In this document: in pieces, positions 1 through 41,360 of the stretch | How the letters are laid out: every line of letters starts with the position of its first letter | Position numbering within the stretch: position 1 is the first letter of the stretch | Source of the DNA: Mytilus edulis | Lineage: Eukaryota | Direction of reading: 5' to 3' | Assembly: GCF_963676685.1 (NCBI RefSeq) | Contig: NC_092346.1 | Location: 58,900,001 to 58,964,000 of the forward strand | DNA length: 64,000 bases | Notes under the pieces: model-generated | Seen by the model: only the letters and a program-made list of their open reading frames with translations | Told to the model about the DNA's origin: nothing | The model's database searches: none | Made by a program: the position numbers and the translations under genes

Positions 1-1126
1 TTACAAAAATGAAAAACACACACTGAGAATTGAAAATTACACACTGAGAATTGAAAATTACACACTGAGAATTGAAAATAACACACTGAGATTTCAAAAA
101 GACACACTGAGAATAAATAAACTGAAAAACACACACTGAGAATTGTTAATTACACACTGAGATTTCAAAAATACACACTGAGATTAATATGCAAATTACT
201 AATGAATATTCATGAGATGAATAATTCAACAGATTAATATCTTGATCTCAAAAACTCTTGTCATTATAGTGAAATGCGATTCCTTCAACCAATTAACATT
301 CGTAATAAATTTCATGACTTAACATCGCTCATATTCACAAGTTTGTTGCCTATAATTCATATCATTACTACCAGTGTATCGGGACTTAAAACCGTTTTAG
401 CATGGGTCCCTTTTAAAAAGTCTTCCAACTGTTACCCTGATTTCGCAAGTTAATCTTTTATATTTTTGTTACGTTTATATGCTATTATAGACACTTAAAA
501 AACTTCACTGCATTATATGTTTTTCAGTGCAAATTGTTCCAAGTTTTCTTATAATTTTAATATAAAGTTTTCCATTTGGTATAAATATTTTGTAAGAAGA
601 ATAAGCGGGTATTTTTCTTGTCCTTGTATTTCTAAAGTTTTTTTTATGAATAATTTGGAACCAAATCGAAGGACTAACGAGTTCTGTCCCCTAGTTGCTA
701 TAAGCTTGTAATAGATTCAGATTAAGTATGCTAATTAGATATGTGCGCATAAAAAGTGCGCACAAATCTCAGTGTGTCATTTTAAATTCTCAGTGTGTAA
801 TTTCAAATTCTCAGTGTGTGTTTTCAATTTATTTATTCTCAGTGTGTCTTTTTGAAATCTCAGTGTGTTATTTTCAATTCTCAGTGTGTAATTTTAATTC
901 TCAGTGTGTAATTAACAATTCTCAGTGTGTGTTTTTCATTTTTGTAATCTCAGTGCGTCGTTATGAAATCTCAGTGTGTAATTTTTAATTCTCAGTGTGT
1001 GATTTTTAATTCTCAGTGTTTGTTTTGAAGTTTTTAAATCTCAGTGTGTTTTTTTTTATAATTCTCAGTGTGTAAATTTCTCGAAAAATGGTTTAAACAT
1101 AGTTTTGACGAGAACGGCTTGCCATA
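1..1126. mobile_element. Foldback-type non-autonomous DNA transposon with tandem-repeat arms (left end outside window)
   Basis: ACACACTGAGA(A/T)TT tandem units at 1-185 are mirrored by inverted TCTCAGTGTG units at 767-1075. The putative right terminus ...CGGCTTGCCATA resembles the ...CGGCGCCCCGTA terminus of the element at 26844-28083. Confidence 0.7.
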
Positions 1127-1325
1127 ATATCATATATGGAATTAGTATTGGGGTAACTGAAAAAATGAAATCATTGGATATGCCTACAAGAACGCGTGCT
1201 AGCAGCCAAATATTCATTGGCGGTGTGAAGCAATCTTCCAGTATTGATAATTCAACAAGGTTGCTTGGAATCCACGATTCTTACTTTTGTTACCAGATAA
1301 GGATCACTCTTCAAATGATTTATGT

Positions 1326-1394
1326 CACGGTGGGTATGGTTGTCCTGCGAGAGAACGTACTGTGCTGGTGATTTGGTCCTGACGGGTGCTGGTG
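1326..1394 (+). repeat. Left terminal inverted repeat with RSS-like heptamer CACGGTG
   Basis: Reverse complement of 13711-13779 at 68/69 positions. Confidence 0.95.
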
Positions 1395-2460
1395 ATCAAT
1401 GAAAAAATGTAAACAAAGACGAAAATAATGATTTTTGACGTTTTCACTCATAAAAAATGGAAGAAAACGGTTGAGATTTTTCAATTTTGTTTCTTATGGG
1501 TTCATATGTAAACCATTAAAAAGTTGACCCTCTAAACTTTTTCAGTAAGCGTAACACAGAAATGCTCATTTTCAGAAAATCTCGAACTAAAAAAATAAAA
1601 CAAAAATGCTCATAGAGTCCACTTTCTATACCGCAATCCACGCGACAAAACTATTTTGTGAAAAAACATTGCAATTTATTAACATTTAGCATTTTCTCAA
1701 TTTATTCATGTCCTGATACTGTGCTGGTGGGTCCTGTCATTGTGCTGGTGGGTCCTGATACGGTGCTGGTGATTTTGGATAAGAAGTTGGTCATATTTGA
1801 AACAAATGTTACAAAATCAATAAAATTGGGCAGATAATTGTTGTCAATAGGATCTATGACTCCTATTTTAGCTCTTGTGCATCCATTTGGCTGTTTAATA
1901 TGTGTTTTGAAATGATCGTAATCAACAATGATCAAAGCCAATGCCGCATAGACATGTTTGTTAGCGCTCCGCATACCCCTCCCCACTTCCACCCAACCAA
2001 CCCTCCTCATGTCCTCCTTCATTGTTACAGTGGTGTACCAACACAACAATTTATTACATAAAATAATAACACAAAGACACACATTATTGAATAACGAATG
2101 CTTGCAGGTACTGAAAGCTAGTTCAAAGCCGCATTTTCAACTTATAGATAAACCATGTTCTCATATACAAAAATCCCAATCGTGTAGTTTAAAAAAGTCT
2201 CAAAACTTAAGTTCACATTTTAATGTTTGATGAAGCAGAACTTTAAAAGTGTGCAGTGAATCTTGTTCTCACAACAGTTATTGTCATAATTATGTTTACA
2301 TAAGACTCATAAAGGAATTAAGAAGGTACCAAGCAATATTTTACAGTTCAATTTAATGATCATGAATGGAAGGAAATGGTACGTACGTTTACATAGGACA
2401 AAAAGAAATTGATAGTATTTTTTGGCGAAAGACTTAAATGCTTCCTTGCATTATATAGTA

Positions 2461-2736
2461 CAGCTCTTCTATAAAAGCATGCAAAAAAAAACTTTGATTG
2501 ACTTGCTTGCTATGTTTGCTTGGATGTTTTCAAACAATAGGTAGGCGGAGTTTCAATACATACTGGGATTTGATTGAACAAATACAAACTGACAGGAATT
2601 GAAGTTAATGTTTATTTTCCAAATAAATTGTAGTATATAGTAAACAGACTACTTACCTGTCGTTTACAAACATCCAAACAATCATAGCAAGCAATTTAAT
2701 CAATGGTTTGCTTTGCATATATTTATAGAAGAGCTG
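2461..2736. mobile_element. Tc1/mariner-type MITE
   Basis: TIR CAGCTCTTCTATAAA / TTTATAGAAGAGCTG, TA on both sides, largely palindromic. Confidence 0.8.
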
Positions 2737-3430
2737 TAAATTCTAAAAAAAAAAAAATTGTTGTCGTAGATGGTTAAATCCTCAACAAAATCACAATATC
2801 TTTGTTGGAACGAATAAAGGTTTTAAATCAAATTTTCGTGGACTTTTTAGCTTCCACCCTGACGAGACATGTTAGCTGTTCGTATGCTGTTGCACCTGAC
2901 GCACGGAAACTTTCACATTTCCATCTTCTTTTCTGAAATATTTTACCCAGCTCATACTTGACAGGACTGTTACCCCTAGTAAAAGGTGTAACCAATGAAT
3001 TGAACACAAGTTAAAAATTCCATAATACTATATAATTCATTTTATGTGTCAATTTGTTCGAAAAAAGTCGAAAAGAAGAGAGTTTTTTTAATGCCATGAT
3101 TATCTGCCGCTTTCTAGATCTATGCTTAGCATTTATTTCAGATGACATGGACTCCTCACCCTGGTGACCCTGCTGCCTTTCATAACTTTATCCGTATACA
3201 TATATTAATGGATAAACAAAAGGCTGCAACTGGTATTTGATTCGTTGTAACGAGAATATTTGTGGTGAATGGAAACTGTGAGGGTCAAAATCTTAAATTG
3301 CTTATAAATGTTGCTGGACCCAGTTTCGTTATCTGATCTGAATTTTCTGAAATGTGCAAGGTGATAGACATTTTGATTTTTTTTTACTCGGTAAGTTTTG
3401 CCCTAATTGCTTGAACATTTGCAAATATTA

Positions 3431-3692
3431 AAGCCGATTTCAATGAGTGTGTAGACAAAGGGAATATCTTTGGTTATCTTGCTTGCTGAACAGAAAAGTC
3501 ATTGTTAGGTTATGTAAACTACCCTACTTTAAGAGTAGACTAGTCCGACAAATGACACATCTTTCTGTCTGTAGGACCAGGCTAATTCGAAAGGAGGGTA
3601 TAGACCTTACCTAACAATGACTTCACGGTTTAGCTAACAAGCAAGGTAACCAAAGATATAACATTTGCCTACATACTCATTGGAATCGGCTG
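3431..3692. mobile_element. Palindromic MITE (TA-flanked)
   Basis: AGCCGATTTCAATGAGT...ACTCATTGGAATCGGCTG with long internal inverted symmetry. Confidence 0.75.
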
Positions 3693-4559
3693 TAACTAAA
3701 AACTCGAATACATTTTAACAGACAGTGGTCTGGTTTGTTGATGAATATTGTTTTTCCTAGATTCACTCTTGAAAAAATCATTTGGTAACATTTGGTCATT
3801 GTAATACGGACGCCAAGACAATAAATGAACCACATCTGCCTTTATCTATCTACTCACACGATCCCTCGACACAGTTGAGCTTATATATGATCTTATAGCG
3901 ATTCGGGTTAAAAATCAGTTGAAATTAAGCCAGTTATTTGTGTGTGTAGATTTGTATTGTTTTAAACTGTTATGACTTTTTAAAGTTAAATCTAGGTGTT
4001 TAATCTAAGAATTTCTTTTTTAAACTTATTTACTTGTTTTATACTCAATTGGTAGTATGAAGTTACGAGATATTTTAATTTTTGAAATTGAAGGCACAAT
4101 TAACAAAGCAAACGTTAGTTTCAAATACTTTTAAATAGATTTTTAAGGATAATGTACCCTTGTGTTGATCCCATGCTAAACATAACAAAAATTTCTGTAC
4201 AAAGGTCTGTGAATTTTCTACAAAAATAGTGATTTTATTTTCACCAAATTCTCTTTTTCTACTAATTACAATAATGAACTATAAATAATAATGCTTTGCA
4301 AGAAGTTTCCCCTTGATACATGTATATGTACAAAATTATATCTCTATTATTCATTGTCTGTGCTGTTTTGATACTATTGCAGTTTGCACATTTTCGTAAT
4401 TGACAGGCCACAGGAGGGGGTGATAAACCATACACGAAAATATAAAATATTGATCTAAGTACTTAATTTGCATCTCTGAACCCCCACCCCGGCTTGTTTT
4501 TTAGGAGGGTGTCTAAAAATGGTCGATTACAGACAGCCGAGTACGCATTTTACTTTCCA

Positions 4560-4697
4560 GGCCTCAGGGTCATAAAACTTTCGAGCATGATTTTTGTACT
4601 CAGACTCGAAAATCAACCAATCAAATTGCTGGATTTCATGTTTCGAGCATGATTTTTGTGCTCCGAGCACTTAGCAAAGTTTTATGCCTTCAAGGCC
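4560..4697. mobile_element. Short MITE (PIF/Harbinger-like)
   Basis: GGCCTCAGGGTCATAAAACTT ... AAGTTTTATGCCTTCAAGGCC in a CCAGG context at both ends. Confidence 0.6.
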
Positions 4698-6194
4698 AGG
4701 CGTGTTTACGTTGATTGTTAAAGTCCTGAAAACGGATAGATAGAAACAAAAATGTTTGATTTATCTGGCTTTAGATTCAGTTTTTTTAAATATAAATTAA
4801 GTCTACATTTTAATATAATAATACTAAGAATTCACAATATAAAAAAATGCAGAAAAAAAATGGAGATGTGAAATATCTTAATAAGGAGTCATTACTACAG
4901 AGATGGTGTGTTTGACACACAAAACTTAAAAGCTTAGTGATATTACCAATATTAAAATAAAAATGTATTTTAGTTTGGTAGTTTTTCCATTTACTCATTT
5001 TCAATCATAATTAAGGCACATTTGATTTTTTATTCATAAAAATATTTAAATATAGAAAAGTAGGGCACATTGTTCACTTCCTCCCCTGTAATTCTTTATC
5101 AAAAATATTTATTTATTTTGGAATTTTGAAATGAAAAAGCTAAGAAATCTTAAGTTTTGTTAATGTTCTCTAGGTTATCTCGTCTTCATTCTCTGACATA
5201 TTCTCTGACATATTCTAGTCTGCCCTTTCATAAAATAGTGAACTTTTTTTAGTGTTCTATCGAACTTTCGAAAAAAATACCTGATAACCGTTCAGACAAA
5301 AAAAATATGTTGAAAAAATCTTACAGATACAGCAAGTGATTCTTAATAGCTGTAAGATACATTTTTCTTTTAAAATACAACTTTTAAATCGGACGGGAAA
5401 CTATTCCAAGCTTAACACTTTCACTGTAACCTCGCTCTAACTTATCCCCCATCCCCCCCAAAAAAACCAAACAAACAAACCCGCAATACTATTGTCATTC
5501 TTATAGTTAGCACTCAATTTTTCACAAACAAATGTGTTTTAAGCTGCTAAAGACATATGATTCAAACGCTCAGAAAGTCCTTTCTTCTATATTTTTTCTC
5601 TCCATTTTTATACAAAACCTTTTACATTTTTATTTTATGGGTTATTGTTGAAGGTCGTACAATGACGACGTATGGTTGTTAACACATACTTTCTTTGGTT
5701 TCTTATGGAAATTTGTCCATTGACAAGAAATATACAACATCATCTACTTTATATAAGTATTGTATAAATTACAACGTATTTTGGCGATCTTGCAAAATGA
5801 TCGTAATCCCGAAAATCGTAAACATATTTTCTTATCTTACAAGTGTGGACACAGATGAGTGTGGATAGAATGTTTGGATGTTTGACAGTGTTTTATGATA
5901 AATGTAGTTCTATGATTTTCCTATATGTGTTGTTAACTGTGTTGCACGATGACAACCAACCGGAGCATTAGGAGTATTGTTTATTTTATATTTAGTTTAG
6001 TTTTTATGTTCAAGACAGGCATGGAAGAGACACTAATTGCATTAGTTACCAAATGATTATGATAGAATATGTTCCACATCTTTGATTTTGGATACATTTT
6101 ATAGTTAGGAGAGCAACACATAATAGGTTCAATTTTTCGTGATTTTTTTAAATTGGGAGATGCCATCAGAGATATGATATCTGAGAACATGATA

Positions 6195-6460
6195 TAAGGA
6201 GCCTGTAATTCAGTGGTTGTCGTTTGTTTATGTGTTACATATTCGTTTTTTCTTTATTTTTTGTACACAAATAAGCCTGTTATTTTTCTACTTTGAATTG
6301 TTTCACATTGTCATTTCGAGACCTTTTATAGCCGACTATGCTGCATTAGCTTTGCTCATTGTTGAAGGTTGTGCGGCGACCTGTAATTGTTAATTTCTAT
6401 GTCATTTTGGTCTGTTGTGGAGAATTGTCTCATTGGCAATCATATCACATCTTTTTTAAT
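6195..6460 (+). repeat. Abundant interspersed repeat (GGAGCCTGTAATTCAGTGG...TCATTGGCAATCATACCACATCTT family)
   Basis: Matches 29878-30145. Further copies in either orientation at ~39700-39900, 43415-43610, 48260-48410 and 48750-48840. Confidence 0.8.
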
Positions 6461-6498
6461 ATGTATTTGCTAACTATTTGTATGGTTCTATTTATATA

Positions 6499-7660
6499 TA
6501 CTGAGTGCCAATGAAAACGCAACACTTGGTTTTTAAAAAATAAAATTTATATTAGAAATCATAATCTTTCAAACTGAATTGTTCTTGAAAATTAACAATT
6601 CTAACAATAGATCGATATCAAACAAAAATGTTTCATTGTCATCTTTCGGGCGCAATAGATAAACGAAACATCCAATGTCGAATCATCAAATCACAGTCCT
6701 AACTAAAAATGTTACAACCCCGTTGTGCAGTGCAATCTCGACAGCGCCGTGGAATTGATCATCCCGGACGTTTAATGTGATCTCGGGGAATGTTATTCCA
6801 CTTGTCCTGTAAAGCAAACTCAAGCTGACTTTATGATATTGGTGGTGGTTTTCATCGTCTAAACTATGTCAAATCTGATGCAAAATTTGCTCTATCGGAC
6901 CTAAATCTGGCGAAACGCATGACTTTTGGCCAAGGCTGGTGCCAAACGTCTATGTAACCACCACTGATGATTTTTGGTACATAATAAATGATTTTTGGTC
7001 TAAAGAATTCGATGTTTACACCAGACAGCCGTTTAGATGTCGACTGAGGTCCTCTTTAACCGTTGAATTTCTGCGCAAATAGTGCTTTACTGAAATTGCT
7101 CCATAGGATCTACCGTGCCCACCATTGAACTCACGTGACCTTTGGACATTCATCAGAGTCGATATCGGATATGTTAAAGACCAAATGTATCGGTTTTACT
7201 GAGCGTTTCTTGCTTTTTGAACCCCGGGATGTGGCTTATCATTAACTGATCCATTTTTGTTGAATTTGTGGATGATTTGGGTTATTGTATGCTGTGAAAG
7301 GCTTCATTGGATCTTGCCCGAAACTGCATGTCGCTGGTTGTCAGAAAGTCCTGGCATTTACTCAGATGTTTATTGCAGTTTCCTTACAATAAGGGCGGGA
7401 AAATTCATGACATTAGCCAAGCTTTAAATGACAAAATCGTGAAAATGGTGCGTATGTTGAAAAGCGGTGAACTCGATTTATGTCCGTTCAAAATAACCCT
7501 TACTTTGCATTTGTTCCAAAAATCACCCAACCCTAAAGTTGTAGACAATTGTCTTTAAAGTCATTTTCAACCAACTTTACAAAGTTCTAATATAAAATAA
7601 ATAAAAATTATCAGACTTTTTTGAAAAACAAAAGTGTTGCGTTTTCATTGGCACTCAGTA
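6499..7660 (-). mobile_element. Tc1-family non-autonomous transposon (deletion derivative), copy 1
   Basis: TIR TACTGAGTGCCAATGAAAACGCAACACT, TA TSD, degenerate Tc1 transposase fragments. Homologous to 14713-15727. Confidence 0.85.
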
Positions 7661-10600
7661 TATCTTTGTGGTGGCTTGTCAGTATCATTAGTAAAACACC
7701 TTAAAATGTTGAATTGATCCTCAGATTAGAAGACATTTATTGGTTTTTAGTAATGACAATGCCTAACATGATGCTTGGGCCTGATGAGCTAGAAAGTAAG
7801 CTTCTGTGCTGTTTTCTATCAATTCTTTGATAATATCTCCTTCAAAGCTGGTGAAAGCAAAACAATTTTGGTCAATGGACAAATAATGTTTGGTTCAAAC
7901 AGAAAAAAATGCTTTTATCTCCCTGTTACTTACATTGTACATAGAAATGATAATACTTGGAGACATCCTTGTACATGAGAGTTGTCTGTAAAATCTTTAT
8001 TTCACAACGAATGAATTGCATAACAATGAACTGAGCTCAAAGCAAAGCACTTTAATAATACACTTTGACCGAGAGCTCAATCCAGTGATATACTTTGTAC
8101 TACAGGTCCTTCATGAACATCCATCAACCAGAACCATATCTCAATAACATGCCATTCTACATGGTTGGATCAGAAGTCCTGAAAAAGACATGATTTTTTT
8201 TTATTGTATTTAAAGTATATATGCATACATGTAGGTTAAAACTTTCACAAATTGGTGGTATAATCATTCAGTGTCTGGCAACTATCAATCGCTTCATGCA
8301 CAAACTGATATAGGTTGAGCATGAGTGCCCCTCTGTTGGAAATAAAAATATACCTCCACCTAATTTTAGTCAACTGATGAAGAAACATTCAAAACTACAA
8401 AATGTTATCAAAGACTTGTCAGTGTCTATATATAGCTAGTCACCATCGCCACTGAATCAGTGATATATGTACACATAAATACATGTAAGACTAAAATTAA
8501 AGTACATATATAAGACTAAAACTGACATTCGGTCTTTACCTTCATTCCCCAAGTCTTGTTCAAATCTGATTCATGATAAAATAAAAATCATAACCAATGA
8601 AATCAAAGGTAAATTAAGAGCCCACCCCCCCCTCCCCCTTGTCTGGAAAAAAAATGGTTGATTATTTAGAGAACCACTGGATCATGATCAGAGTGGTCCC
8701 TCTCTTAGGCAGTCAGTGGGCCCCCACTTATGAAAATTTCTGGATTCGCCACTGGAAATATCCCTCTAATAGACTAGCGTTTAAATCCCAGTTTTCTAAT
8801 ATGGTAGCTAGGTGGAACCTAAAACTAAAAAATTTGAAAAAAATATTTTAAATATATTTCAAATGCATGTACATGTGATAATATAAATTCTCCAAATTTC
8901 ACTGTATTTTCCCTTTTGATGTTTTTCAACTACAGCCAGTTTGGTGTGGGTTGATGTTTGATTGTTGTACATGTTATATATCGACATGAGATTTGTTTAT
9001 ATACATACAACCCAAAGAAATTGTTCTGGTCATATAAAAAAATGTTAAGCGTCTTAATTTTCTTCCAGTCTTAGTACCGCCTACTTAACGTTTTTTTTGG
9101 TACAATTTTCAATAAGCACTGTTAAAGTGTGTGAATAACGTATAAATGTTAAGTTTAATAAAAGACACAAAAACTGTATTGCTATCAATTCTAAAATGAG
9201 TTTTGAGGGTGGTGTGAAGAAGCAAGCTTATTATAATTATATATGCCAATCTCTTATTATATTATTTATTGGCAACCCTTATTACCCTCGTGACACAAGT
9301 TCTATTTATTTTTCACTTTTAAGAGGAAAATAAATGACTTAGGGTTAGCGCTAAAATTAGGGTAGGTCATCAGGTAACGGTAAACAAACATATACTATTT
9401 TTTTGCCTAAGACTAGTCATTTTGCCACTGAGTTTTGAGGGCAGTGTGAAGAAGAAAGCTTATGCCAATCTCTTATTATATATTATGCAAGTGTATTTCG
9501 AAAATTTTGAGGAAAATACAGCAAGATTAGAGTTAGTTTAGCATGGGCTTAGTTTATTTATAAACATAATGTAAACTTACCTAAATTTTCACTATTAACT
9601 ACTGAACAGGATCCGGAACACTAACAATACTATGGTATGAAAATACTTCTAATCTGCAACACCTACTAAAAGACCAAGAAATAAAGAGAAATCAAAAAGT
9701 AAAATAAATAAGTTTGATTGCACCTTGAGTGAATAATTCTACATATTCCCAAAAATTCATTTTTTATTGAATCTTGGATTTCTAAATACCTAAATTGACT
9801 GGCTGATTAAACATACACATGTATCAATGAACTTTAATAGATCAGGTTTTCAATGATCTTTCACTATTTTGGTTTCCCTCTTACACCTCAATTGATATCA
9901 ATAACCCCAAATAAGAGGCCCACAAACCATAAACTGAATACAATTTCATTAAATATCTGGGAATCCACCCCCTTTATAAGTAACGTACCACTCAGAAATA
10001 TTAATCTTAAATTTATGTAAATGAAAAGTAAGCTCCATAAATAAAATTCAACAATGTGGCTAAAAATTGACCATAGATAGACAAACAATTCACTTACATT
10101 CGCATTTGAACTATGTTTTTGTTAATACAAATTAAAAGTAAACGTCATTCAGACAGCTAAGCTAATTTGAGGCGCATTGCAATTCAAATTACAATTGATG
10201 GTAGGATGTAAACCTTTTCAAATGTGAATTAAACTAATTCAAATTAGTTAATGTCAATCCAATTCAAATTAGGTGTGAACTCTGTATTATTATCAGGTAG
10301 TTTTAAAACTGAAAGATACTTTTAAGGGAAGGGAAAGAAACGGTTGAAACCATGTGTGTTACAAACACTGTTTATTCAAGTCAGAATCCTGGATCTCAAA
10401 AGCACTTTCGTAATGTCAAATGAAAACATGAATATGATAGTAATATACAAAACTATTTATTACTAAGTAAACGACATTTATTTTAGTGAAAAATCTGCAT
10501 TCCAGGTGTAAATTGAGGCAAATAATATCATTGAGTGCATTTTCTTGTCAAGTGACCAGCAGACATTGAAATCTACCTTTTGAATGAAAGGAGAACTCAT

Positions 10601-11538
10601 AAGTTGAAAATGAATGATGTAAATCTAGATTCTAATAATAGCAAAAGGGAGCTCACATTCACAACAGTTAAAGCATTGCTGAGTTAGTGAACAGAGCATT
10701 TTTCTCATTAACTTAAATCCACCTATTGGAATGGATAAAACCCGAATTTTAAGACATAAGTTATAAAATATCTGATAAAAAGCAGTACTAAGCGTGCATG
10801 TTACGCTAGAAACATATTCAAAGAATACAGTTTTATAACTTCTTAATGTCATATCCAATATTTATCAAAACCTAAAGGGGAGATACATGTGTACATGCAC
10901 CTTACTTCCTATTTTTTTCCGTGGATGTCAATACACCTAATCGCTATTTATTCCATACCGGATAAGTTCTAACATTACACAACTTTTTCATCCAGTTGAA
11001 GCTATCTGGGGGCCGTTGAAACAATTCACCATGCACAATACTTTTTAATGAAAACCCTTTTAACTTACCGTAAATACTTAAAACAAAATCATTTTTACTT
11101 CAATTTAATTTCGAAAAAAGTGGATCATACTATATTAAAGTTTCTTGATGATCGCTTTCTAAAGTTTTTCCTCCCTCAGCTCTCTACTGAAAAACCTCTA
11201 TTTTCAGCCGCATGACCCAAACAGGAAGTTTTACATGTGACTGGTTTTGCCAGATTGGACTAAATAGCAATAAGGTGTATTTTCTGGGATTGTTGAAAAC
11301 TTGCATATTCATCACTATCTGATTTTATGGGTATAACAATCCAGACAGACAAATAGCAATAAGGTGTTTAGGAAAACATGACCTAAAGCCTCCTTCATAT
11401 AAGTCAAAAACTTGGGAACTCATACTGAATGGTCAAATGTGTTCAATATGAAAATTGCAGTTAAGATGGTAAAATCACAAATCAGCCGTTAACGAAATGG
11501 ACTGAAAGTATGACTTTTGCGCAAATTTAAAAGGGAAA

Positions 11539-11688
11539 CAGAGGCGGATTTAGAGGGGGGCCCGGCCCCCCCTTTTTGGGAAAAAATTTGGTTGCTTATA
11601 TAAGGAATCACTGAAGCGTGACTGGAGCGGCCCCCTCTTAGGTCAGTCAGTGGGCCCCCACATATGAAAATTCCTGGATCCGTCACTG
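11539..11688. mobile_element. Small MITE with G/C-run interior
   Basis: CAGAGGCGGAT...ATCCGTCACTG, flanked by GGAAA on both sides. Truncated relative at ~8620-8754. Confidence 0.7.
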
Positions 11689-13710
11689 GGAAATGACGGG
11701 GAAGGGCCAAATTAACATTCAAGCAGAGCAAATGCTGTTTAAATTAGTATGCGGGTTTTAAATATAGAGTGAAAGTGGAGTCATCTTTTTAAACTTAAGT
11801 TAAATATAACTTATGTAGACTTACCTTCTAATTCAATAAAAAAAAAAACACACGACTCAGAACTATGTCTAATTCACTTGGACTACTAATATGCAAACCT
11901 AAAAACAAAAAGAAATATATCATAAAATAGTGATTGAAAAATTCACAACACTGTGAAAGGATAATCCAGACACGTGTTACACGGGGAGCATGTTTGTTTA
12001 CAAATAATAATGTCACATGATCGCGCACTGACCTCGCATGTTGCATCGCCCTTACAATTCACCAATACATAACCATTTTCATGCAAACATGCAACGTGAA
12101 TGTGATTGGTTATCAAATAATACAAAAATAATGCATGAACCGTTGAAGAAAAAATTATTTCATCAAATAGATGGATTTTCACTTTCGACACGAATAGGTC
12201 GAGTTGACATTTCTGTCATCGGAGATAGTATTGAGATAAATGGGATAAAACGGACCGTCAAAAAGGTCTAGAGAAGCACATCAGTAGAACCTTAACATGA
12301 ATAAGTAATACTTACAAAAAATTCTCTAATTGATAAACTATATGACTAAAATTTCACGAAAATAACAATAAATAATTTTGTTCTTCGTGATGAAACTGCT
12401 TAAATTGGCGCGAAAAAATATTCTTACTCCTACTGCTTCACGTAAAAAAAAATGTATAGAATTGAATTCGACTACAGTTCAGCATAAAAAAAACGTGAAT
12501 ATGCAAAAGTCTGATAATATGTTAATGAAAAAAGTGTGTATAAATTTTCGTAAACGAAGTTACCTGTATACTTCACCAAGAACTACATTTGAGCGCAAAG
12601 ATCGTATGTGTGATTTGGCTTATGTAACAATCGTCAATCGGAACTACTCGGCTATTCACTTCGTGCAACCAGAAAGGCCGAGTAGTTCCGATTGGTAACA
12701 AAGTACAACATGATTAATGGAATTTTTTGCGTTGCTATTAAATCATTGAAACCACGTGATTGAGGCCATCTATTTTTATTGCGGGTTCCACATATCTAAA
12801 TCGGAATTATAGAAAAAATGGAATTTTGTGAGCAGAATCAAAACAGAAATGATGAACACTGCAACATTTCCATCAAAATAAAAATAGGATGGAGGATCTG
12901 TGTATTCACATTATTTGTAAAACTCTCCTTCTTCCTGTGAAGCGTGTGCTTTACATCGAGGCTTATTATGCTAAGCATCGACGCCACAGTACTTCAACCA
13001 ATCAGACAATGTTTATTTGGGGCATTCTATCTAATTTTACTCAGATTTTGGAATATTTTAATCGAAATTATAGAAAAATGGAACATTGTTAGTACATATA
13101 AAATAGAAAAAGATGAATACTTTTAGCTGGAGATAATTTGGATGGGGGTTCTGTGTATTCACATTATTTGCACAACTCTCCTTACTGATGCCATATTTTG
13201 GAATTTCCGTGACCTAAATGGTTCGCGAAAATTAATATTTTTATATATAGTATAGTAAAAAGGGGGCAAGAAGGGTTCCATTAACAGGCCAATAAATAAA
13301 ATCACAGTTAATTATAAAAAGAATAAAAAATAGTTTTTTTTTCTCTCATAATAACAGTAAACAGATTCATAACAATGTCAATTTCAAGAAAGCAGACAAC
13401 AGTTAATTACTAGTAGTCAATAACAGTACAGCATCAATGATCTTGACTGAATATTTGCCACTTTTAACTAAAATATAAAGGCACAGAACCAGGACATAGG
13501 AGCACAGAACCAGGACCGTTTTTCTTAACACCAGCACATCGTCAGGACAATTCCGTTTAACGAACTTGCACGACTTTTGCAATTTTATATTGTTGTAATA
13601 TACTTTGCATGGTAATTATGACGCATCAGAGAAAAATTAAGCAACAAAACAGTCGTTTTATTGCCGTTCTGATACAATGTAAACAAACCCACCAGCACAG
13701 AATCAGGACC

Positions 13711-13779
13711 CACCAGCACCCGTCAGGACCAAACCACCAGCACAGTACGTTCTCTCGCAGGACAACCATACCCACCGTG
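13711..13779 (-). repeat. Right terminal inverted repeat with RSS-like heptamer CACGGTG
   Basis: Ends ...CATACCCACCGTG and is followed by the TATGT duplication. Confidence 0.95.
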
Positions 13780-14712
13780 TATGTTATCTTTAACTAATCT
13801 GGAAAAAAAACATCATACAGTTATATTGGTGGTACAAAAATTAATGATGGTTTACAATATTTCACCAATTTTTTTTTAGATAGTTTGTTTATTTTACATT
13901 ATATTTATCCATTTGTTTATACCTTTTTTAAATTGTAAGCTTATTAAAAATTAAACATTTTCTTGTCAAAAATCTATTTTCTTCAAACTAGCGGAAGATT
14001 ACTTTAACAAAACTTATAAATCTTCACCAATATCGAAAGCAAGGTTTGCCAAATATGTACTAGATTTTAACACTTGTGTAACTTGCTTATAATTTAATTT
14101 GTGACATTGTTATTATTCTCCTTAACTGTAACCTCATTTTTGGTCGGTGTTAATGACTTAACTAAAAAAATATACATATATATATATATAGCATATACAG
14201 TTTTCCAAGAAGACATTTATTGGCTTCCTCCAATGCTTAGATCTCTATTATTATTCTCTGATTATTCTGTGTATTTTCCCAAGTTCTCCCGTGATTTTAT
14301 TTATTTTTTTTTTGCTCCCATGATTTGGATTTGTTTTGTTTATTCTTCCGATAGTTTGAAAAGTATTTTCGATAACTACTAAATCGAAGCATATACATAG
14401 ACTATCAGTTAAAAGATTACAGTTTATTTTTAATATTTTTTCTAAGCTCTTCATATTGTATGACCGTTCATTAAAAACACGCAATCATATAGGTTATTTC
14501 ATTATTCTATATTATAATAAAAAGATTAGTTAAATAAAAATTATCAGTTTCACATAGATAATTTAACTAACTTGTCAAAACTATTATAAAAACATTGTAT
14601 ATCGATGGTCATTACCGATTTGATATAACGGGTGAATGGCAATATGTCGACTTAAAAAAAATCCAAAGCTTTCAATGAACCGTTACACAAGAAGTCACTG
14701 GAAAGTAACATA

Positions 14713-15727
14713 TACTGAGTGCCAATGAAAACGCAACACTTTTATTTTTCATAAAAATCTTATAATTTTTATTTTATTTATATTATAACTTTGTATAGTT
14801 GGTTGAAAATGACTTTTAAGACAATTGTCGACAACTTCACGGTTTTCTGACAACCAGCGACATGCAGTTTTGGGCATGATCCATTGAAGCCTTTTACAGC
14901 GTACAATTACGAGAAGACTGAAGTTGTAGCCTCTACAATAACCCAAATCATACACAAATTCAACCAAAATAGATCATTTAATGACAAGCCACATCCTGGG
15001 GTACAAAAAGCAAAAAACGCTCAGCAAGATCGATAAATTTGGTCTTTAACATATTTGATATGACTATGATGGCTGTCCAAAGGTCACGAGAGTTCAATGG
15101 TGGTCACGGTAGAACCTTTGGAGCAATTTCAGTAAAGTACCATTTGCGCAGAAATTGTTAAAGAGCACCACAGACTTTCCTTAGTGACATCTAAACGGCC
15201 GTCTGGCGTAAACATCGAATTCTGTAGACTAAAAAAAACAATCAGTTTGTTCCAAAAACCGTCAGTGGTGGTTACATAGACATTTGGCACCTGCCTTGGC
15301 CAAAATCATGCTGTTCGCCGAATTTTGGTCCGATCGAGCAAATTTTGCATCCGATTTGACATGGATTAGACGATAAAACCCACCACCAATATCATAAAGT
15401 AAGCTTGTTTGCTTTGCTTGACAAGTGGAATAACATTACCCGGGATCACATTAAACGTCCGGGATGATCAATTCCATGGCATTGTCGAGATTGCGCTGCA
15501 CCACGGGGTTGTAACAGTTTTAGATAGGACTGTGAGTTGATGATTCGACATTGGATGTTTCGTTTACCTATTGCGCCCGAAAGATGACGATGAAACAGTT
15601 TTGTTTGATGTCGATCTATTGTAAAAATTGTAAATTTTCTAGAACAATTTAATTTGAAAGATTATCATTTCTAATATAAATTTTATTTTTGAAAAACCGA
15701 GTGTTGCGTTTTCATTGGCACTCAGTA
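14713..15727 (+). mobile_element. Tc1-family non-autonomous transposon, copy 2 (opposite orientation)
   Basis: Same TIRs and TA TSD as 6499-7660. Interior is the reverse complement with substitutions and a deletion. Confidence 0.85.
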
Positions 15728-16125
15728 TAGTTTATTTAAGTATTGCAGTCATGTACGATATTTAAGTTCTAGAGCTTCTTAAAAATACCGTAGACATATC
15801 GGAATGACCCAAGACCTCGGTATCACTGTACGCATCTACAAAAGCTAGCTCTTCTCTCGCAAACAAAAGGTGTAAATGAAAAAGATCGTGCACAACCAAG
15901 ACTTGCAAATTCAAAATTTAAAAAGCTACGATACCATGTGGAAGTAAATGTCACCCCAAGCCTACATGCAAGAATATAATTAGCGATGAAAACTTACTAT
16001 GGCATCTAATTTTTACGTAGTATTTGAATTATAAAATTAATAAATTGTCATGTAACCATCATTGTTTTTTAGATAAAGTTTTTGTATTATTCCAACTTTT
16101 ATAATGTAATTTAAAAAAAAATACC

Positions 16126-16715: not shown

Positions 16716-18770
16716 ATGTCACGTTACATGAAAGCAGAGAAGAAACAGTTCTCCAAAAATGTTCACGACTTTATTATTCGTCCATTGTTGCGACAGCGGC
16801 AGACAGGAGAACTATGCGACATCACATTGGTAATTAACGGGAAAAAATTCAGTGCACATCGTTCAATTCTTGGATTATGGAGTCCATATTTTCTTTCAAT
16901 GTTTACTTGCGATATGAGAGAAAAGTCTCTAGAGGAAATAGATCTGTCTGAATCCCTTGTTTTAGATGATGACGATGTATTTGGTCTAGTTTTAGATTAC
17001 ATGTATACGGGATCGTTAACCATCTGCATAGAGAATGTAGAAGCAGTATTAAGAATCTCAAACTTTCTGCTTTTGGATGATGTGAAGGAATACTGCAGAC
17101 AATTCTACATAGACTTAGGTAATTTGGACTTGTCCAATTGTCTCCGGGTCAGATTTTTAGCTGAAACCCATAATTTATTAGATGTTTGTAATGCCTGTCA
17201 AAAGATGATTGAGTCGCGCTTTCATGACTATCTTATTTTCCAGCCTGATATCATAGCACTACCCCCACAATATTTTTTCCAGTTACTGGAGGATCCAAGA
17301 AACGTGATTCATTCGAATTATTCTGACCTCAAAAAACTAATACAAAAATGGGTCGATTTCGATCGAGCTACACGAATAGATTTTCATGAAGATTTGAGTG
17401 CTTGCATCAAACTTTGGGTATGTGACTCAACAGATACGCCGAGTACTATGCTGTCTTTCGGTTGCATGGATTTCTATAAAAGTGAAATATCTATGCAATC
17501 TTCGCTTACAGACGGCAATCGTAAGGCCAAAGGGTATGTTCTTCTATCTCAAGTGCGAGACAATGTCATGCACGGTTCTTTTGGAATGCAGGAAGATCCA
17601 AAACCAGTATTATATAGTGTAGTATGTAATCAAGGTATGAAATATATTAAGATGCTTGTTTACAGTATTTTTGACAGAAAATGGTACAGTTTCCCTATAC
17701 CGGGAGAAAAACTATCACATTTAATCCCAACAAGACAGACCGTCTGTAGTCTTGTATCTTACAGAAGTTGCTTATATATGTATTTATGTTCTAGTTTTCC
17801 GTATCCCACTGATATGTTAAAGATAAATATACTGATGATAGATATGCTGAAAGGAGCTCCCGTTCTCTATTCATTCCGTACTACAGATTTCTACAACCCT
17901 AGCTACCGGACTACCTTAACGAACTATAGATCCGTCCCTCCAGCTATTGTAGCTTGTAATCACCACCTATATATTGTTGGCAACAGAGAAGGAACAGGAA
18001 ATATTTTCATGTGCAATACAACTAATCAGCAGTACAAATGTTTTCAAATTCCTGGTGCTCGTTTTATCAGTCTCGCCAGAGCTGTTGTTAAGAATGATCG
18101 ATTCATATTTCTTTGGTTTAGACATAGAACTGGCCCATCAGAAGAATTCAGTATCAAGAAAAATATTGGCTTCGTTATGTTTGATTCTAAAAATAGAATA
18201 TTCAATTCTTGGGAAATATCTCCTCCTGAGATTTCTTATGATGATTTTTCATCTCCATACACTTTGTGTGTAAGAGACGAGACGGTTTTAATTTACCACC
18301 CTGGTAAACCGGCACTTGTTCTTGATGAAGTAAGATACAAATGGATCATATCGTTAAGAAAAGTTCCATCCTTAGAGATAACCAAATATGCAGATGCATA
18401 TGGCTTCCATCTACACGTGGCAACAAACAATGGGATATTTGTTTTAGAAAATGATGCACCATTTACTACCTCAATGTACGAAATAAATGAAACGTTTCCT
18501 CACCCGATCGTTCACGTTCCTCCACCAATAGATAATTTATCTTTAGTTGCGGCTGGATATTTATCAAGTCAAGATTTAAACGGACTTGAAGTATTCGATA
18601 AATATGACGAATGCTATGCAAATGCTCTTCATGTAACAATGAAACTGTCCGAACCAGAAACCGAAGATAGCGGAACCTCGCCTTCGGACCGTGACTCGGA
18701 GAACGATTTTGAATATGATGAGGATATATATGATTATGACTACGATCTAACGGGTGAATACGGGTTCTGA
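16716..18770 (+). CDS. BTB/POZ-BACK domain protein with divergent kelch-like C-terminus (KLHL/KBTBD-like Cullin-3 adaptor), single coding exon, 684 aa
   Basis: BTB: CDITLVINGKKFSAHRSILGLWSPYFLSMF...LDYMYTG. BACK: SNCLRVRFLAETHNL. Beta-rich C-terminal half and an acidic Tyr-rich tail. Uninterrupted 2-kb ORF. Confidence 0.9.
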   Translation: MSRYMKAEKKQFSKNVHDFIIRPLLRQRQTGELCDITLVINGKKFSAHRSILGLWSPYFLSMFTCDMREKSLEEIDLSESLVLDDDDVFGLVLDYMYTGSLTICIENVEAVLRISNFLLLDDVKEYCRQFYIDLGNLDLSNCLRVRFLAETHNLLDVCNACQKMIESRFHDYLIFQPDIIALPPQYFFQLLEDPRNVIHSNYSDLKKLIQKWVDFDRATRIDFHEDLSACIKLWVCDSTDTPSTMLSFGCMDFYKSEISMQSSLTDGNRKAKGYVLLSQVRDNVMHGSFGMQEDPKPVLYSVVCNQGMKYIKMLVYSIFDRKWYSFPIPGEKLSHLIPTRQTVCSLVSYRSCLYMYLCSSFPYPTDMLKINILMIDMLKGAPVLYSFRTTDFYNPSYRTTLTNYRSVPPAIVACNHHLYIVGNREGTGNIFMCNTTNQQYKCFQIPGARFISLARAVVKNDRFIFLWFRHRTGPSEEFSIKKNIGFVMFDSKNRIFNSWEISPPEISYDDFSSPYTLCVRDETVLIYHPGKPALVLDEVRYKWIISLRKVPSLEITKYADAYGFHLHVATNNGIFVLENDAPFTTSMYEINETFPHPIVHVPPPIDNLSLVAAGYLSSQDLNGLEVFDKYDECYANALHVTMKLSEPETEDSGTSPSDRDSENDFEYDEDIYDYDYDLTGEYGF

Positions 18771-39929: not shown

Positions 39930-41360
39930 AAAAGAGGGACGAAAGATACCAAAGGGACAGTCAAACTCATAAATCTAAAACAAAACTGACAACGCCATGG
40001 CTAAATTTGAAAAAAGACAAACAGAAAAACAATAGTACACATGACACAACATAGAAAACTAAAGAATAAACAACACGAACCCCACCAAAAACTAGGGGTG
40101 ATCTCAGGTGCTCCGGAAGGGTAAGCAGATCCTGCTCCACATGTGGCACCCGTCGTGTTGCTTATGTGATTACAAATCCGGTAAATAGTCTAATTCGGTA
40201 GGTCAAATTCATGAAAGGGAAGGGGATTGTAGTTACGACGTAAGGAACATATCATTTGTGAAACGGTTATTCCATAACGGTCAACCAACTCGTGATGGCG
40301 TCCGTAAAATTTACGAAGGGATGATTTCAACTTCACCATTTGGAACTCTTGGTTTAATAGCTTCCTTGTAAGCAGTAACCCTCTATCAAGAAAATCATGA
40401 TAGGAAATGCAAGCACGGGAATATCGTATCAATTGGGAGATATATATATATACAGGTGCTGCTGGAATGTTGCTACTTAGAAATGGAAAGTTCACAATTG
40501 GAAAGCTGAAATCATCTCTTTTGTCGTAAAGTTTTGTTTTCAACCGACCCTCATTGTCAATTTCTAGATGTGAGTCAAGATATGAAGCCGACTTAACTGT
40601 ATCTGTAGTATCCTTTATCTCAAATTCGATGGGATAGATGCGTTCCACATAGTCACCAAATTTTGAATTGTTTAGTGAAAGAACGTCATCTATATAGCGG
40701 AAAGTAGAGTTAAAGGATATTGCTAACTTCTTATCTTTCTTCCTAAGAAGTTGCTGCATGAAGTCAGCCTCATAATAATAAAGAAACAAGTCGGCAAGTA
40801 GAGGGGCACAGTTTGTTACCATTGGGATGCCGACAGTCTGTTGAAAAACACGTCCTCCGAACGTTACAAATATGTTGTCAATCAAGAAATCAAGCATCTT
40901 GATAATATCGGTTTCAGATAATTTTTTGTTTGAATCAGAGTGATTCTTTACAAAGTATGATTTATCCCTCCCTAAGACAAGATACTTGTATCTACGTTGG
41001 CCATTCTTTTTTATGAAGCAAAGTAAATAAATACCAACTCTTTTAATTTGTCTTTTAGTTTGGAATGTGGAATACTTTAGTACTTGTGTAAAGAGTAGAA
41101 AAGTCAAATGTTTTAATATTGTTACAAGATGAAAGAGAGTTAGATTGTATGTACTCTAAAAGATCTTTGGAATTTTTAAGTATCCACATCTTAAATGATA
41201 CTTAAATTGACACAAATCGTGATGTGTAAAGAGTAGAAAAGTCAAATGTTTTAATACTGTTACAAGATGAAAGAGAGTTAGATTGTATGTACTCTAAAAG
41301 ATCTTTGGAATTTTTAAGTATCCACATCTTAAATGATACTTAAATTGACACCAATCGTGA
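39930..41360 (-). mobile_element. 5'-truncated Penelope-like retroelement (RT without C-terminal GIY-YIG; Naiad-like), pseudogenised
   Basis: WILKNSK..KTFDFSTLYT, GIPMVTNCAPLLADLFL, FRYIDD, YLD, KLYDKRDDFSFPIVNFPFLSSNIP, YISQLIRYSRAC. Frameshift and deletions present. 3' region repeated at 20458 and 61800. Confidence 0.85.

What the first reader, a model, noticed from the sequence alone, without database searches (positions are those of the whole stretch)
1321..13784. Intact-ended RAG-like (ProtoRAG/RAGL) transposon: CACGGTG TIRs, 5-bp TSD, convergent RAG1-like and RAG2-like remnants
Seen: a 12,454-bp segment bounded by 69-bp TIRs (1 mismatch) beginning CACGGTG, one base from the V(D)J RSS heptamer CACAGTG, flanked by a perfect TATGT duplication. 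Established: CAC termini with 5-bp TSDs characterise Transib/RAG transposition, and ProtoRAG/RAGL elements carry RAG1L and RAG2L tail-to-tail between such TIRs. Seen and inferred: + strand remnants give the RAG1 N-terminal Zn motifs in the right order, and - strand remnants give kelch-like and PHD-like motifs. The ORF track shows none of this because the genes are spliced and decayed. Inference: a bivalve relative of the transposon ancestral to V(D)J recombinase, with its own long TIR family.
Basis: partly seen in the sequence, partly recalled or inferred. Interest (0 to 1): 0.93.

Follow-up and report, generated by a model that had tools for sequence, protein, structure and literature searches.

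The report
Gene-less Transib-type transposon copy, swollen by insertions
This is a real, recently mobile DNA transposon with RAG/Transib-style ends, but it is a non-coding 5-kb element present about 500 times in this mussel genome and enlarged here by an unrelated 7.4-kb insertion; it is not a RAG1/RAG2-bearing ancestor-like transposon.

Summary
The ends are exactly as described: 69-nt TIRs (one mismatch) starting CACGGTG, flanked by a perfect TATGT duplication. The family is real. The 31-nt tip occurs 694 times exactly and 1,012 times with up to 3 mismatches, so there are about 500 copies. All 9 other complete copies I read have perfect 5-bp TSDs. The full-length family member is about 5.0 kb, about 99% identical between copies, and has no stop-free frame longer than about 92 aa. 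The window copy is that 5-kb element minus 121 bp, plus a 134-bp MITE (4562-4695) and one 7.4-kb unit of an unrelated young repeat (about 5844-13257). Pfam scans of 147 stop-free pieces found no RAG1, zf-RAG1, RING, Kelch, PHD or RAG2. Pfam RAG1, RAG2 and zf-RAG1 also found nothing genome-wide, though that negative is weak. The TIR matches neither the protostome RAGL consensus (7/17) nor the Transib nonamer layout. Instead both ends carry arrays of GTGCTGGTG. Verdict: a non-autonomous Transib-type element moved in trans by a transposase I could not find. The scan had already noted similar CAC-ended, 5-bp-TSD elements elsewhere in this genome (23 notes).

The parts
1321..1325 (.). Left target-site duplication TATGT
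   Evidence: 5-bp TSDs are perfect in 9/9 other complete copies
1326..1394 (+). Left terminal inverted repeat, 69 nt, begins CACGGTG
   Evidence: 99% complementary to 13711-13779; single mismatch at TIR position 46; tip repeated 694x exactly in the genome
1362..1771 (+). Left subterminal array: exact GTGCTGGTG at 1362, 1386, 1721, 1742, 1763; 21-bp tandem unit at 1710-1771
   Evidence: 9 exact copies, all in the two element ends, none elsewhere in 64 kb; 0 of 100 shuffles reach the count
1326..4561 (+). Family body, part 1 (reference copy positions 1-3333), with a 121-bp deletion between 1921 and 1922
   Evidence: 98.0-99.7% to reference copy L039; 29 other copies carry the extra 121 bp
4562..4695 (.). 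Nested 134-bp MITE-like insertion flanked by CCAGG (4557-4561 and 4696-4700), absent from other copies
   Evidence: a second copy lies in L050:4795-4924
4696..5843 (+). Family body, part 2 (reference positions 3328-4470)
   Evidence: 98.0%
5844..13257 (.). Nested 7.4-kb unit of an unrelated, non-coding, young repeat family (left boundary uncertain by about 5 bp, 5839-5844).
   Evidence: absent from the reference copy; both ends 98-99% identical in dozens of loci; paired lengths 7.3-7.4 kb, e.g. C10:17478007-17485422; no Pfam domain
6496..7663 (.). 1.17-kb TIR-bounded element inside the nested repeat (45-nt arms)
   Evidence: I4; solo copies covering only this part; another copy at window 14707-15729
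13258..13779 (+). Family body, part 3 (reference positions 4466-4989)
   Evidence: 98.9%; right 380 bp at 97-100% in 40 scored loci
13529..13743 (-). Right subterminal array: exact GTGCTGGTG (minus strand) at 13529, 13690, 13711, 13735
13711..13779 (-). Right terminal inverted repeat, 69 nt
13780..13784 (.). Right target-site duplication TATGT

Best explanation
Window 1326-13779 is one copy of a non-autonomous, non-coding cut-and-paste DNA transposon family. The family has about 500 copies. Its full-length form is about 5.0 kb, with many internal-deletion derivatives of 2.1-4.5 kb, and copies are about 99% identical to each other. The ends are of the Transib/RAG type: they begin CACGGTG and always make a 5-bp target duplication.

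This copy reaches 12.45 kb only through later events: one 7.4-kb unit of an unrelated repeat and a 134-bp MITE landed in it, and it lost 121 bp. It encodes no RAG1-like or RAG2-like protein or remnant.

Inferred mechanism: a transposase encoded elsewhere, most likely of the Transib/RAG1 superfamily, recognises the CAC tip and the arrays of GTGCTGGTG in the terminal ~450 bp. It excises the element and inserts it with a 5-bp stagger, here preferring AT-rich sites. Gap repair after excision then produces the deletion derivatives.

Shown: ends, TSDs, copy number, identity between copies, nesting, and absence of coding capacity. Inferred: the identity of the transposase and the role of the 9-mers.
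For: TIR and TSD.

Family size: 694 exact 31-nt tips and 1,012 with up to 3 mismatches, against 0 for the control.

TSDs: 9/9 other complete copies have perfect, mutually different 5-bp TSDs.

Lengths: 6 of the 9 other complete copies read are 4,977-5,025 bp. 36 tip pairs on C1/C2 range from 2.1 to 5.4 kb, plus three of 7.1-8.7 kb. Pairing the left and right ends found gives mostly 4.93-5.03 kb.

Identity: mean pairwise 98.99%; window copy 98.4-99.1% to the others.

No coding capacity: the longest stop-free frame in reference copy L039 is 92 aa, about what chance gives; Pfam found nothing in 147 pieces; stop density is random in all frames.

Nesting: the window copy is colinear with the 4,989-bp reference except for the 121-bp gap, 4562-4695 and 5844-13257. 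The large insert is an independent 7.4-kb repeat unit.

9-mers: 9 exact GTGCTGGTG, all subterminal and inward-oriented.

Recent local movement: two 99.8%-identical copies of the same deletion variant lie 30 kb apart on C8 with unrelated flanks.

Literature: Transib is described as the only eukaryotic DNA-transposon superfamily with 5-bp TSDs, and it has non-autonomous members (PMC1131882).
Against: No transposase was found. Pfam RAG1 (PF12940), RAG2 (PF03089) and zf-RAG1 (PF10426) gave no match anywhere in the genome, although these searches had no positive control.

The TIR lacks the A-rich nonamer at 12 or 23 bp that is typical of Transib. Targets are AT-rich (TSD GC 23%), whereas Transib/RAG prefer GC-rich sites (PMC1131882).

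Subterminal 9-mer arrays are a CACTA/En-Spm-like trait (own knowledge). A survey of bivalves found only one Transib DDE domain (PMC10294476).

Only 11 copies were read in full. The three long copies (7.1-8.7 kb) could not be fetched, so an autonomous version with the same ends is not excluded.
Confidence: 0.82

Rival explanations
1. One reading: a RAGL/ProtoRAG transposon whose convergent RAG1-like and RAG2-like genes are spliced and decayed between intact TIRs.
For: CAC-heptamer ends and a 5-bp TSD. RAGL transposons do exist in bivalves, including mytilid mussels (PMC7204232).
Against: The 'RAG2-like' region lies entirely inside a nested unrelated 7.4-kb repeat that all other copies lack. The shared body has no long frame and no Pfam RAG1/zf-RAG1/RING/Kelch/PHD/RAG2 signal. 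Stop density is random. The TIR fits the protostome RAGL consensus at 7/17 positions and lacks the AAA at 8-10. Pfam RAG1, RAG2 and zf-RAG1 are silent genome-wide.
Confidence: 0.02
2. Same anatomy, but the family is a non-autonomous derivative of a RAG1L+RAG2L (RAGL) transposon rather than of a RAG2-less Transib, and is moved by a RAGL pair elsewhere in the genome.
For: 5-bp TSD and CAC tip. RAGL-B TIRs also lack a nonamer and are symmetric (PMC10462144). Non-autonomous RAGL elements are reported in a pearl oyster (PMC7204232).
Against: There is no A-rich TR2 next to the heptamer, and the match to the protostome RAGL TIR consensus is 7/17. Pfam RAG1 and RAG2 gave no match in the genome. Martin et al. 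do not mention Mytilus at all, so it is not among the RAGL-bearing species they list.
Confidence: 0.1
3. Same anatomy, but the mobilising enzyme is not of the Transib/RAG1-core kind. It could be a CMC-like (CACTA/Chapaev) or other transposase that happens to make 5-bp TSDs on CAC-ended elements with subterminal repeat arrays.
For: Subterminal 9-mer arrays, AT-rich targets and no nonamer are all atypical for Transib. Earlier unchecked notes on this genome describe 5-bp-TSD transposons whose transposase has a RAG1-type N-terminal finger on a non-RAG core. Only one Transib DDE was found across bivalves (PMC10294476).
Against: 5-bp TSDs are described as unique to Transib among eukaryotic DNA-transposon superfamilies (PMC1131882). 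CACTA/Chapaev make 2-4-bp TSDs (own knowledge), whereas 10/10 copies here have exactly 5 bp.
Confidence: 0.22

Closest known systems
Non-autonomous Transib elements (e.g. Transib-N families of mosquitoes; Kapitonov and Jurka 2005, PMC1131882)
   Same: TIRs begin 5'-CAC with an RSS-like heptamer. The TSD is an invariant 5 bp. There is no transposase gene, so the element must be mobilised in trans. It is multicopy.
   Different: There is no A-rich nonamer 12 or 23 bp from the heptamer. The two TIRs are identical for 69 nt, so there is no 12/23 asymmetry. Targets are AT-rich rather than GC-rich. The body is unusually long (5 kb) for a non-coding element. Both ends carry GTGCTGGTG arrays. No Transib transposase was located in this genome.
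Protostome RAGL-B transposons and their non-autonomous derivatives (Martin et al. 2020, PMC7204232)
   Same: Bivalve host; CAC tip; 5-bp TSD; symmetric TIRs without a nonamer.
   Different: No RAG1L or RAG2L gene or remnant. The TIR fits CACTWMCAAACKTYKBB at only 7/17 positions and lacks the conserved A-rich block at 8-10 (TR2).
CACTA/En-Spm (CMC) elements
   Same: CAC tip, and arrays of a short motif in the subterminal few hundred bp of both ends, oriented inward (own knowledge for the family; for this element).
   Different: The TSD is 5 bp in 10/10 copies, not 2-4 bp, and the tip is CACGGTG, not CACTA.

Membership tests
RAGL / ProtoRAG transposon | Convergent RAG1-like and RAG2-like genes (or recognisable remnants) between the TIRs | tested here: not met
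   No Pfam RAG1, zf-RAG1, RING, Kelch, PHD or RAG2 in 147 stop-free pieces. The claimed RAG2L region is a nested foreign repeat. The 5-kb reference body has no frame longer than 92 aa.
RAGL / ProtoRAG transposon | TIR starting 5'-CAC with an RSS-like heptamer | tested here: met
   CACGGTG, one mismatch from CACAGTG
RAGL / ProtoRAG transposon | 5-bp target-site duplication | tested here: met
   10/10 complete copies
RAGL / ProtoRAG transposon | Protostome RAGL TIR consensus CACTWMCAAACKTYKBB with an A-rich block (TR2) at positions 8-10 (PMC7204232, PMC10462144) | tested here: not met
   7/17 positions match; positions 8-10 are GGT
Transib superfamily (non-autonomous member) | 5-bp TSD, stated to be unique to this superfamily (PMC1131882) | tested here: met
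   10/10 copies, all TSDs perfect, nine distinct 5-mers (ATATT occurs twice)
Transib superfamily (non-autonomous member) | TIR with 5'-CAC and a heptamer like CACAATG/CACAGTG | tested here: met
   CACGGTG: 1 mismatch to the RSS heptamer, 2 to the Transib consensus
Transib superfamily (non-autonomous member) | A-rich nonamer 23 (or 12) bp after the heptamer | tested here: not met
   TIR positions 31-39 read CGTACTGTG and 20-28 read CTGCGAGAG (sequence printed)
Transib superfamily (non-autonomous member) | Preference for GC-rich targets | tested here: not met
   GC of the 30 five-base flanks at the TSD position (left side of each copy) is 23%; T at TSD position 5 in 22/30 and A/T at position 3 in 29/30
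Transib superfamily (non-autonomous member) | An autonomous partner encoding a ~700-aa RAG1-core-like DDE transposase with matching TIRs | tested here: inconclusive
   Pfam RAG1 found nothing in the genome, but the search had no positive control. Only 4 loci share the 20-nt tip with different sequence after the TIR. The long copies could not be fetched.
CACTA / Chapaev (CMC) | 2-4-bp TSD | tested here: not met
   Exactly 5 bp in 10/10 copies
CACTA / Chapaev (CMC) | Subterminal repeat arrays | tested here: met
   9 exact GTGCTGGTG within 450 bp of the ends

The most novel reading that the evidence does not exclude
About 500 copies at ~99% identity, 69% of tips letter-perfect, and a 99.8%-identical pair 30 kb apart together imply very recent or ongoing activity of a transposase that cuts at CAC tips and makes a 5-bp stagger. 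This is in a mussel where no RAG1/Transib core is detectable with Pfam, and in a class where a survey found a single Transib DDE. The enzyme may be a divergent, uncatalogued Transib/RAG1-superfamily member that reads its ends through CACTA-like 9-mer arrays instead of a nonamer or TR2. Alternatively, an unrelated transposase may have converged on the RAG-type end signature.
Probability: 0.3. Interest if true: 0.55.

Novelty: new member of a known kind. Interest (0 to 1): 0.25.

Why it matters
As it stands this is an ordinary finding. It is a non-autonomous DNA transposon with nested insertions, and it removes a spurious candidate for a bivalve 'proto-RAG'. RAGL transposons in bivalves are already published in any case (PMC7204232).

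The residual value lies in the family. It is abundant and very young, and its RAG-type ends are in a mollusc. That points to a living transposase of the RAG1/Transib kind, or a convergent one, still to be found in this genome. Its ends (heptamer plus 9-mer arrays, no nonamer, no TR2, AT-rich targets) would extend the known range of end recognition in this superfamily.

The case also cautions that motif-level reading of AT-rich non-coding DNA easily yields zinc-finger or kelch 'fossils'.

Tried and rejected
1. Genome-wide Pfam searches for the RAG1 core, RAG2 and zf-RAG1 found no match. The controls were silent, so these are weak negatives only.

2. I looked for an autonomous partner in four ways:
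- (a) I read 10 copies out to 20 kb. All are non-coding, and the one lacking a right end (L047) is interrupted after position 792.
- (b) I searched for the 20-nt tip followed by non-family bases just after the TIR. This gave only 4 loci, which look like indel or variant copies.
- (c) I ran Pfam on 10 of the 15 stop-free frames of 160 aa or more in the ~290 kb fetched. These were host genes (GPCR, homeobox, BTB, B-box) and no transposase. The five shortest frames (162-266 aa) were not scanned.
- (d) I checked the 337 bp of non-family tail in the 7.05-kb copy L001. It is AT-rich and non-coding.

The long copies at C1:92646853-92655575, C2:29802121-29810686 and C2:23264502-23271597 and the variant-TIR loci therefore remain unread.

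6. Rfam found nothing in 1-16000.

7. A literature search for CACGGTG together with Transib found nothing useful.

8. I rejected a Helitron reading for the 7.4-kb insert: it has no TC...CTRR ends and sits at T|A, not A|T.
Full report
**1. The observation**

- The window reads ...gatt TATGT CACGGTGGGTATGG... at 1321-1339.
- It reads ...CCATACCCACCGTG TATGT tatc... at 13766-13788.
- The repeat finder gives arms 1326-1394 and 13711-13779, 69 nt, 99% complementary. The single mismatch is at TIR position 46.
- The element is 12,454 bp and has no N.

**2. It is a family, and the family settles what the body is**

The left 155 bp recurs at 99-100% identity in all 40 loci that were scored. The right 380 bp does so at 97-100%. 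The 31-nt tip occurs 353+341 times exactly and 513+499 times with up to 3 mismatches, against 0 for the reversed control. With two ends per element, that is about 500 copies in a 1.37-Gb assembly with 14 large chromosomes.

An earlier follow-up note calls the species the blue mussel. I did not verify this.

I read ten other copies out to 20 kb.
- Nine have both TIRs and perfect 5-bp duplications, eight of them distinct (ATATT occurs at two loci): CATTT, ATATT, GTAAC, ATATT, GGTAT, GATGT, GTATC, AGTCT, GATAT.
- Six are 4,977-5,025 bp. Two are 3.98 kb with a 1-kb internal deletion. One is 7.0 kb with two inserted blocks, the larger holding a 438-aa frame with a reverse-transcriptase-like motif.
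- The tenth is interrupted after position 792.

Tip pairs on C1 and C2 give 36 further lengths. Thirty-three fall between 2.1 and 5.4 kb, with clusters near 3.1, 3.6-3.7, 4.0-4.15 and 4.9-5.0 kb. Three are 7.1-8.7 kb. This is the usual picture of a full-length form (here about 5.0 kb) with a swarm of internal-deletion derivatives.

Mean pairwise identity among six full-length copies and the family part of the window copy is 98.99%. The window copy is 98.4-99.1% identical to the others. Two copies of the same deletion variant lie 30,015 bp apart on C8. They are 99.8% identical but have unrelated flanks, which looks like a recent local hop.

**3. Anatomy of the window copy**

Against a 4,989-bp reference copy (L039), the window aligns as follows:

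| Window | Reference | Identity |
|---|---|---|
| 1326-1921 | 1-596 | 99.7% |
| 1922-4562 | 718-3333 | 98.0% |
| 4696-5843 | 3328-4470 | 98.0% |
| 13258-13779 | 4466-4989 | 98.9% |

So this copy is the 5-kb element with three changes:
- It lacks 121 bp, which the other 29 sampled copies retain.
- It has a 134-bp MITE-like insertion at 4562-4695, flanked by CCAGG.
- It has a 7.4-kb insertion at about 5844-13257.

The large insertion is a single unit of another repeat family.
- Its first 1,857 bp and its last 1,858 bp each recur at 98-99% in dozens of loci.
- Those hits start and end at the ends of my queries, which I had set at the insert's boundaries.
- The paired coordinates give unit lengths of 7.3-7.4 kb, for example C10:17478007-17485422 and C2:33269170-33276578.
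- It contains a 1.17-kb TIR-bounded element (6496-7663) that also exists solo.
- It has no TIRs or clear TSD of its own.

**4. The claimed gene remnants**

That stretch lies wholly inside the foreign 7.4-kb insert, which every other copy of the family lacks. That stretch is family sequence, but the family body is not coding:
- The longest stop-free frame in the reference copy is 92 aa. About one frame of that length is expected by chance in 5 kb at the observed stop density (my estimate).
- Stop density is 0.05-0.07 per codon in every frame of both claimed regions, of the whole element and of flanking DNA.
- Pfam scans covered 77 stop-free pieces of at least 45 aa (all six frames, whole element) and 70 pieces of 22-44 aa on the claimed strands. 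None matched RAG1, zf-RAG1, RING/C3HC4, Kelch, PHD or RAG2 at E<=1.
- The best hits of any kind (E 0.0036-0.007 per query, single pieces, unrelated families) are what about 150 queries produce by chance.
- Genome-wide searches with Pfam RAG1, RAG2 and zf-RAG1 found nothing. These searches had no positive control and are weak negatives.

A spliced protein-to-genome alignment with real RAG1L/RAG2L/Transib proteins could not be run, because no such protein was available by reference.

**5. What the ends say**

The 5-bp TSD and 5'-CAC heptamer are the signature of Transib/RAG transposition. Kapitonov and Jurka describe Transib as the only eukaryotic DNA-transposon superfamily with 5-bp TSDs, and note that it has non-autonomous members (PMC1131882).

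Beyond the heptamer the resemblance stops:
- There is no A-rich nonamer at 12 or 23 bp.
- The two TIRs are identical, so there is no 12/23 asymmetry.
- The A-rich TR2 block of RAGL-B TIRs is absent, and the fit to the protostome RAGL consensus is 7/17 (PMC7204232, PMC10462144).
- Target sites are AT-rich: TSD GC is 23%, with T at TSD position 5 in 22/30 and A/T at position 3 in 29/30. Transib and RAG prefer GC-rich sites (PMC1131882).

Instead, nine exact copies of GTGCTGGTG lie within 450 bp of the two ends. Five are on the + strand at the left and four on the - strand at the right. Two sit inside each TIR, and there is none elsewhere in 64 kb. Part of them forms a 21-bp tandem unit whose copy number varies between copies. 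Such arrays are the likely transposase-binding sites and recall CACTA/En-Spm, but CACTA-type 2-4-bp TSDs are excluded by 10/10 five-bp TSDs.

**6. Mechanism**

Shown: the element is a gene-less member of a young, abundant family, and this copy was later hit by other repeats.

Inferred:
- It is cut out and pasted in trans by a transposase encoded elsewhere.
- That enzyme recognises the CAC tip and the 9-mer arrays and makes a 5-bp staggered cut.
- Gap repair after excision generates the deletion series.
- The enzyme is most likely of the Transib/RAG1 superfamily. I put this at roughly 0.55-0.65, including a small share for a RAGL pair. About 0.2 goes to another kind of transposase.

I could not find the partner:
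- Only four loci share the 20-nt tip with different sequence just after the TIR, and they look like variant copies.
- The fetched DNA holds only host genes.
- A survey of bivalves found a single Transib DDE domain (PMC10294476), which makes the partner worth finding.

**7. Comparison and novelty**

RAGL transposons with RAG1L-RAG2L pairs, TIRs and 5-bp TSDs are already described in oysters and mytilid mussels, together with non-autonomous derivatives (PMC7204232).

What is here is a new member of a known kind: a non-autonomous Transib-type element with some atypical end features. The scan had already flagged CAC-ended, 5-bp-TSD elements elsewhere in this genome (23 notes hold the word Transib). 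Two of them have CACGGTG ends and may be the same family. None had identified a transposase.

**8. Limits**

- Only 11 copies were read in full.
- No population or read data could be used.

Noticed in passing
window 5844-13257; also G000 C10:17478007-17485422, C10:22873240-22880584, C2:33269170-33276578: A 7.4-kb non-coding repeat unit at 98-99% identity between copies, with 7,583 and 3,554 first-look candidates for its two ends. It has no TIRs, no clear TSD and no Pfam domain. Its class is unknown. It starts (A)CAAGTGTGGACACAG and ends ...TATATATAGTATAGTA.
   Followed up: partly
window 6496-7663 and 14707-15729: A 1.17-kb element with 45-55-nt TIRs (ATATACTGAGTGCCAATGAAAACGCAACAC...). It is present inside the 7.4-kb repeat, as solo copies elsewhere in the genome, and a second time in this window at 88-90% identity.
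   Followed up: partly
window 4562-4695; L050:4795-4924: A 134-bp MITE-like insertion with about 20-nt imperfect TIRs, flanked by a 5-bp CCAGG duplication. A second copy (89%) lies in another locus.
   Followed up: no
window 10-187 and 763-1080: Two arrays of a 21-bp tandem unit (TGAAAATTACACACTGAGAAT) in opposite orientation just upstream of the element. They may be the repeat-built ends of yet another element.
   Followed up: no
window 16716-18770 (+): An intronless 684-aa ORF with BTB and BACK domains (E 6e-23 and 2e-4), 3 kb downstream of the element. It is a host gene, not part of the transposon.
   Followed up: partly
G000 C8:36163742-36168699 and C8:36193757-36198714 (L017, L016): Two 4,958-bp copies of the same deletion variant, 99.8% identical and 30 kb apart in the same orientation, with unrelated flanks. 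This suggests a recent local transposition.
   Followed up: partly
L035:5619-6932 (-), inside a 7.0-kb copy of the family: A 438-aa stop-free frame with a reverse-transcriptase-like motif (LPKLHK...YRFISSS) but no Pfam hit at E<=0.001. It sits in a 1.96-kb block inserted 97 bp from the right end of that copy.
   Followed up: no
G000 C7:2667886-2667956 (+), C6:38376938-38377008 (+): Loci with the same 20-nt tip but a variant TIR (GTTCTG, CTGTCAGG) and different sequence after the TIR. They may be a sister subfamily and are worth reading when looking for the autonomous partner.
   Followed up: no
window 40190-41107 (-) and 57854-58336 (-): A 305-aa ORF with no Pfam family, and a 160-aa ORF that is a reverse-transcriptase fragment (RVT_1, E 1e-12).
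   Followed up: no
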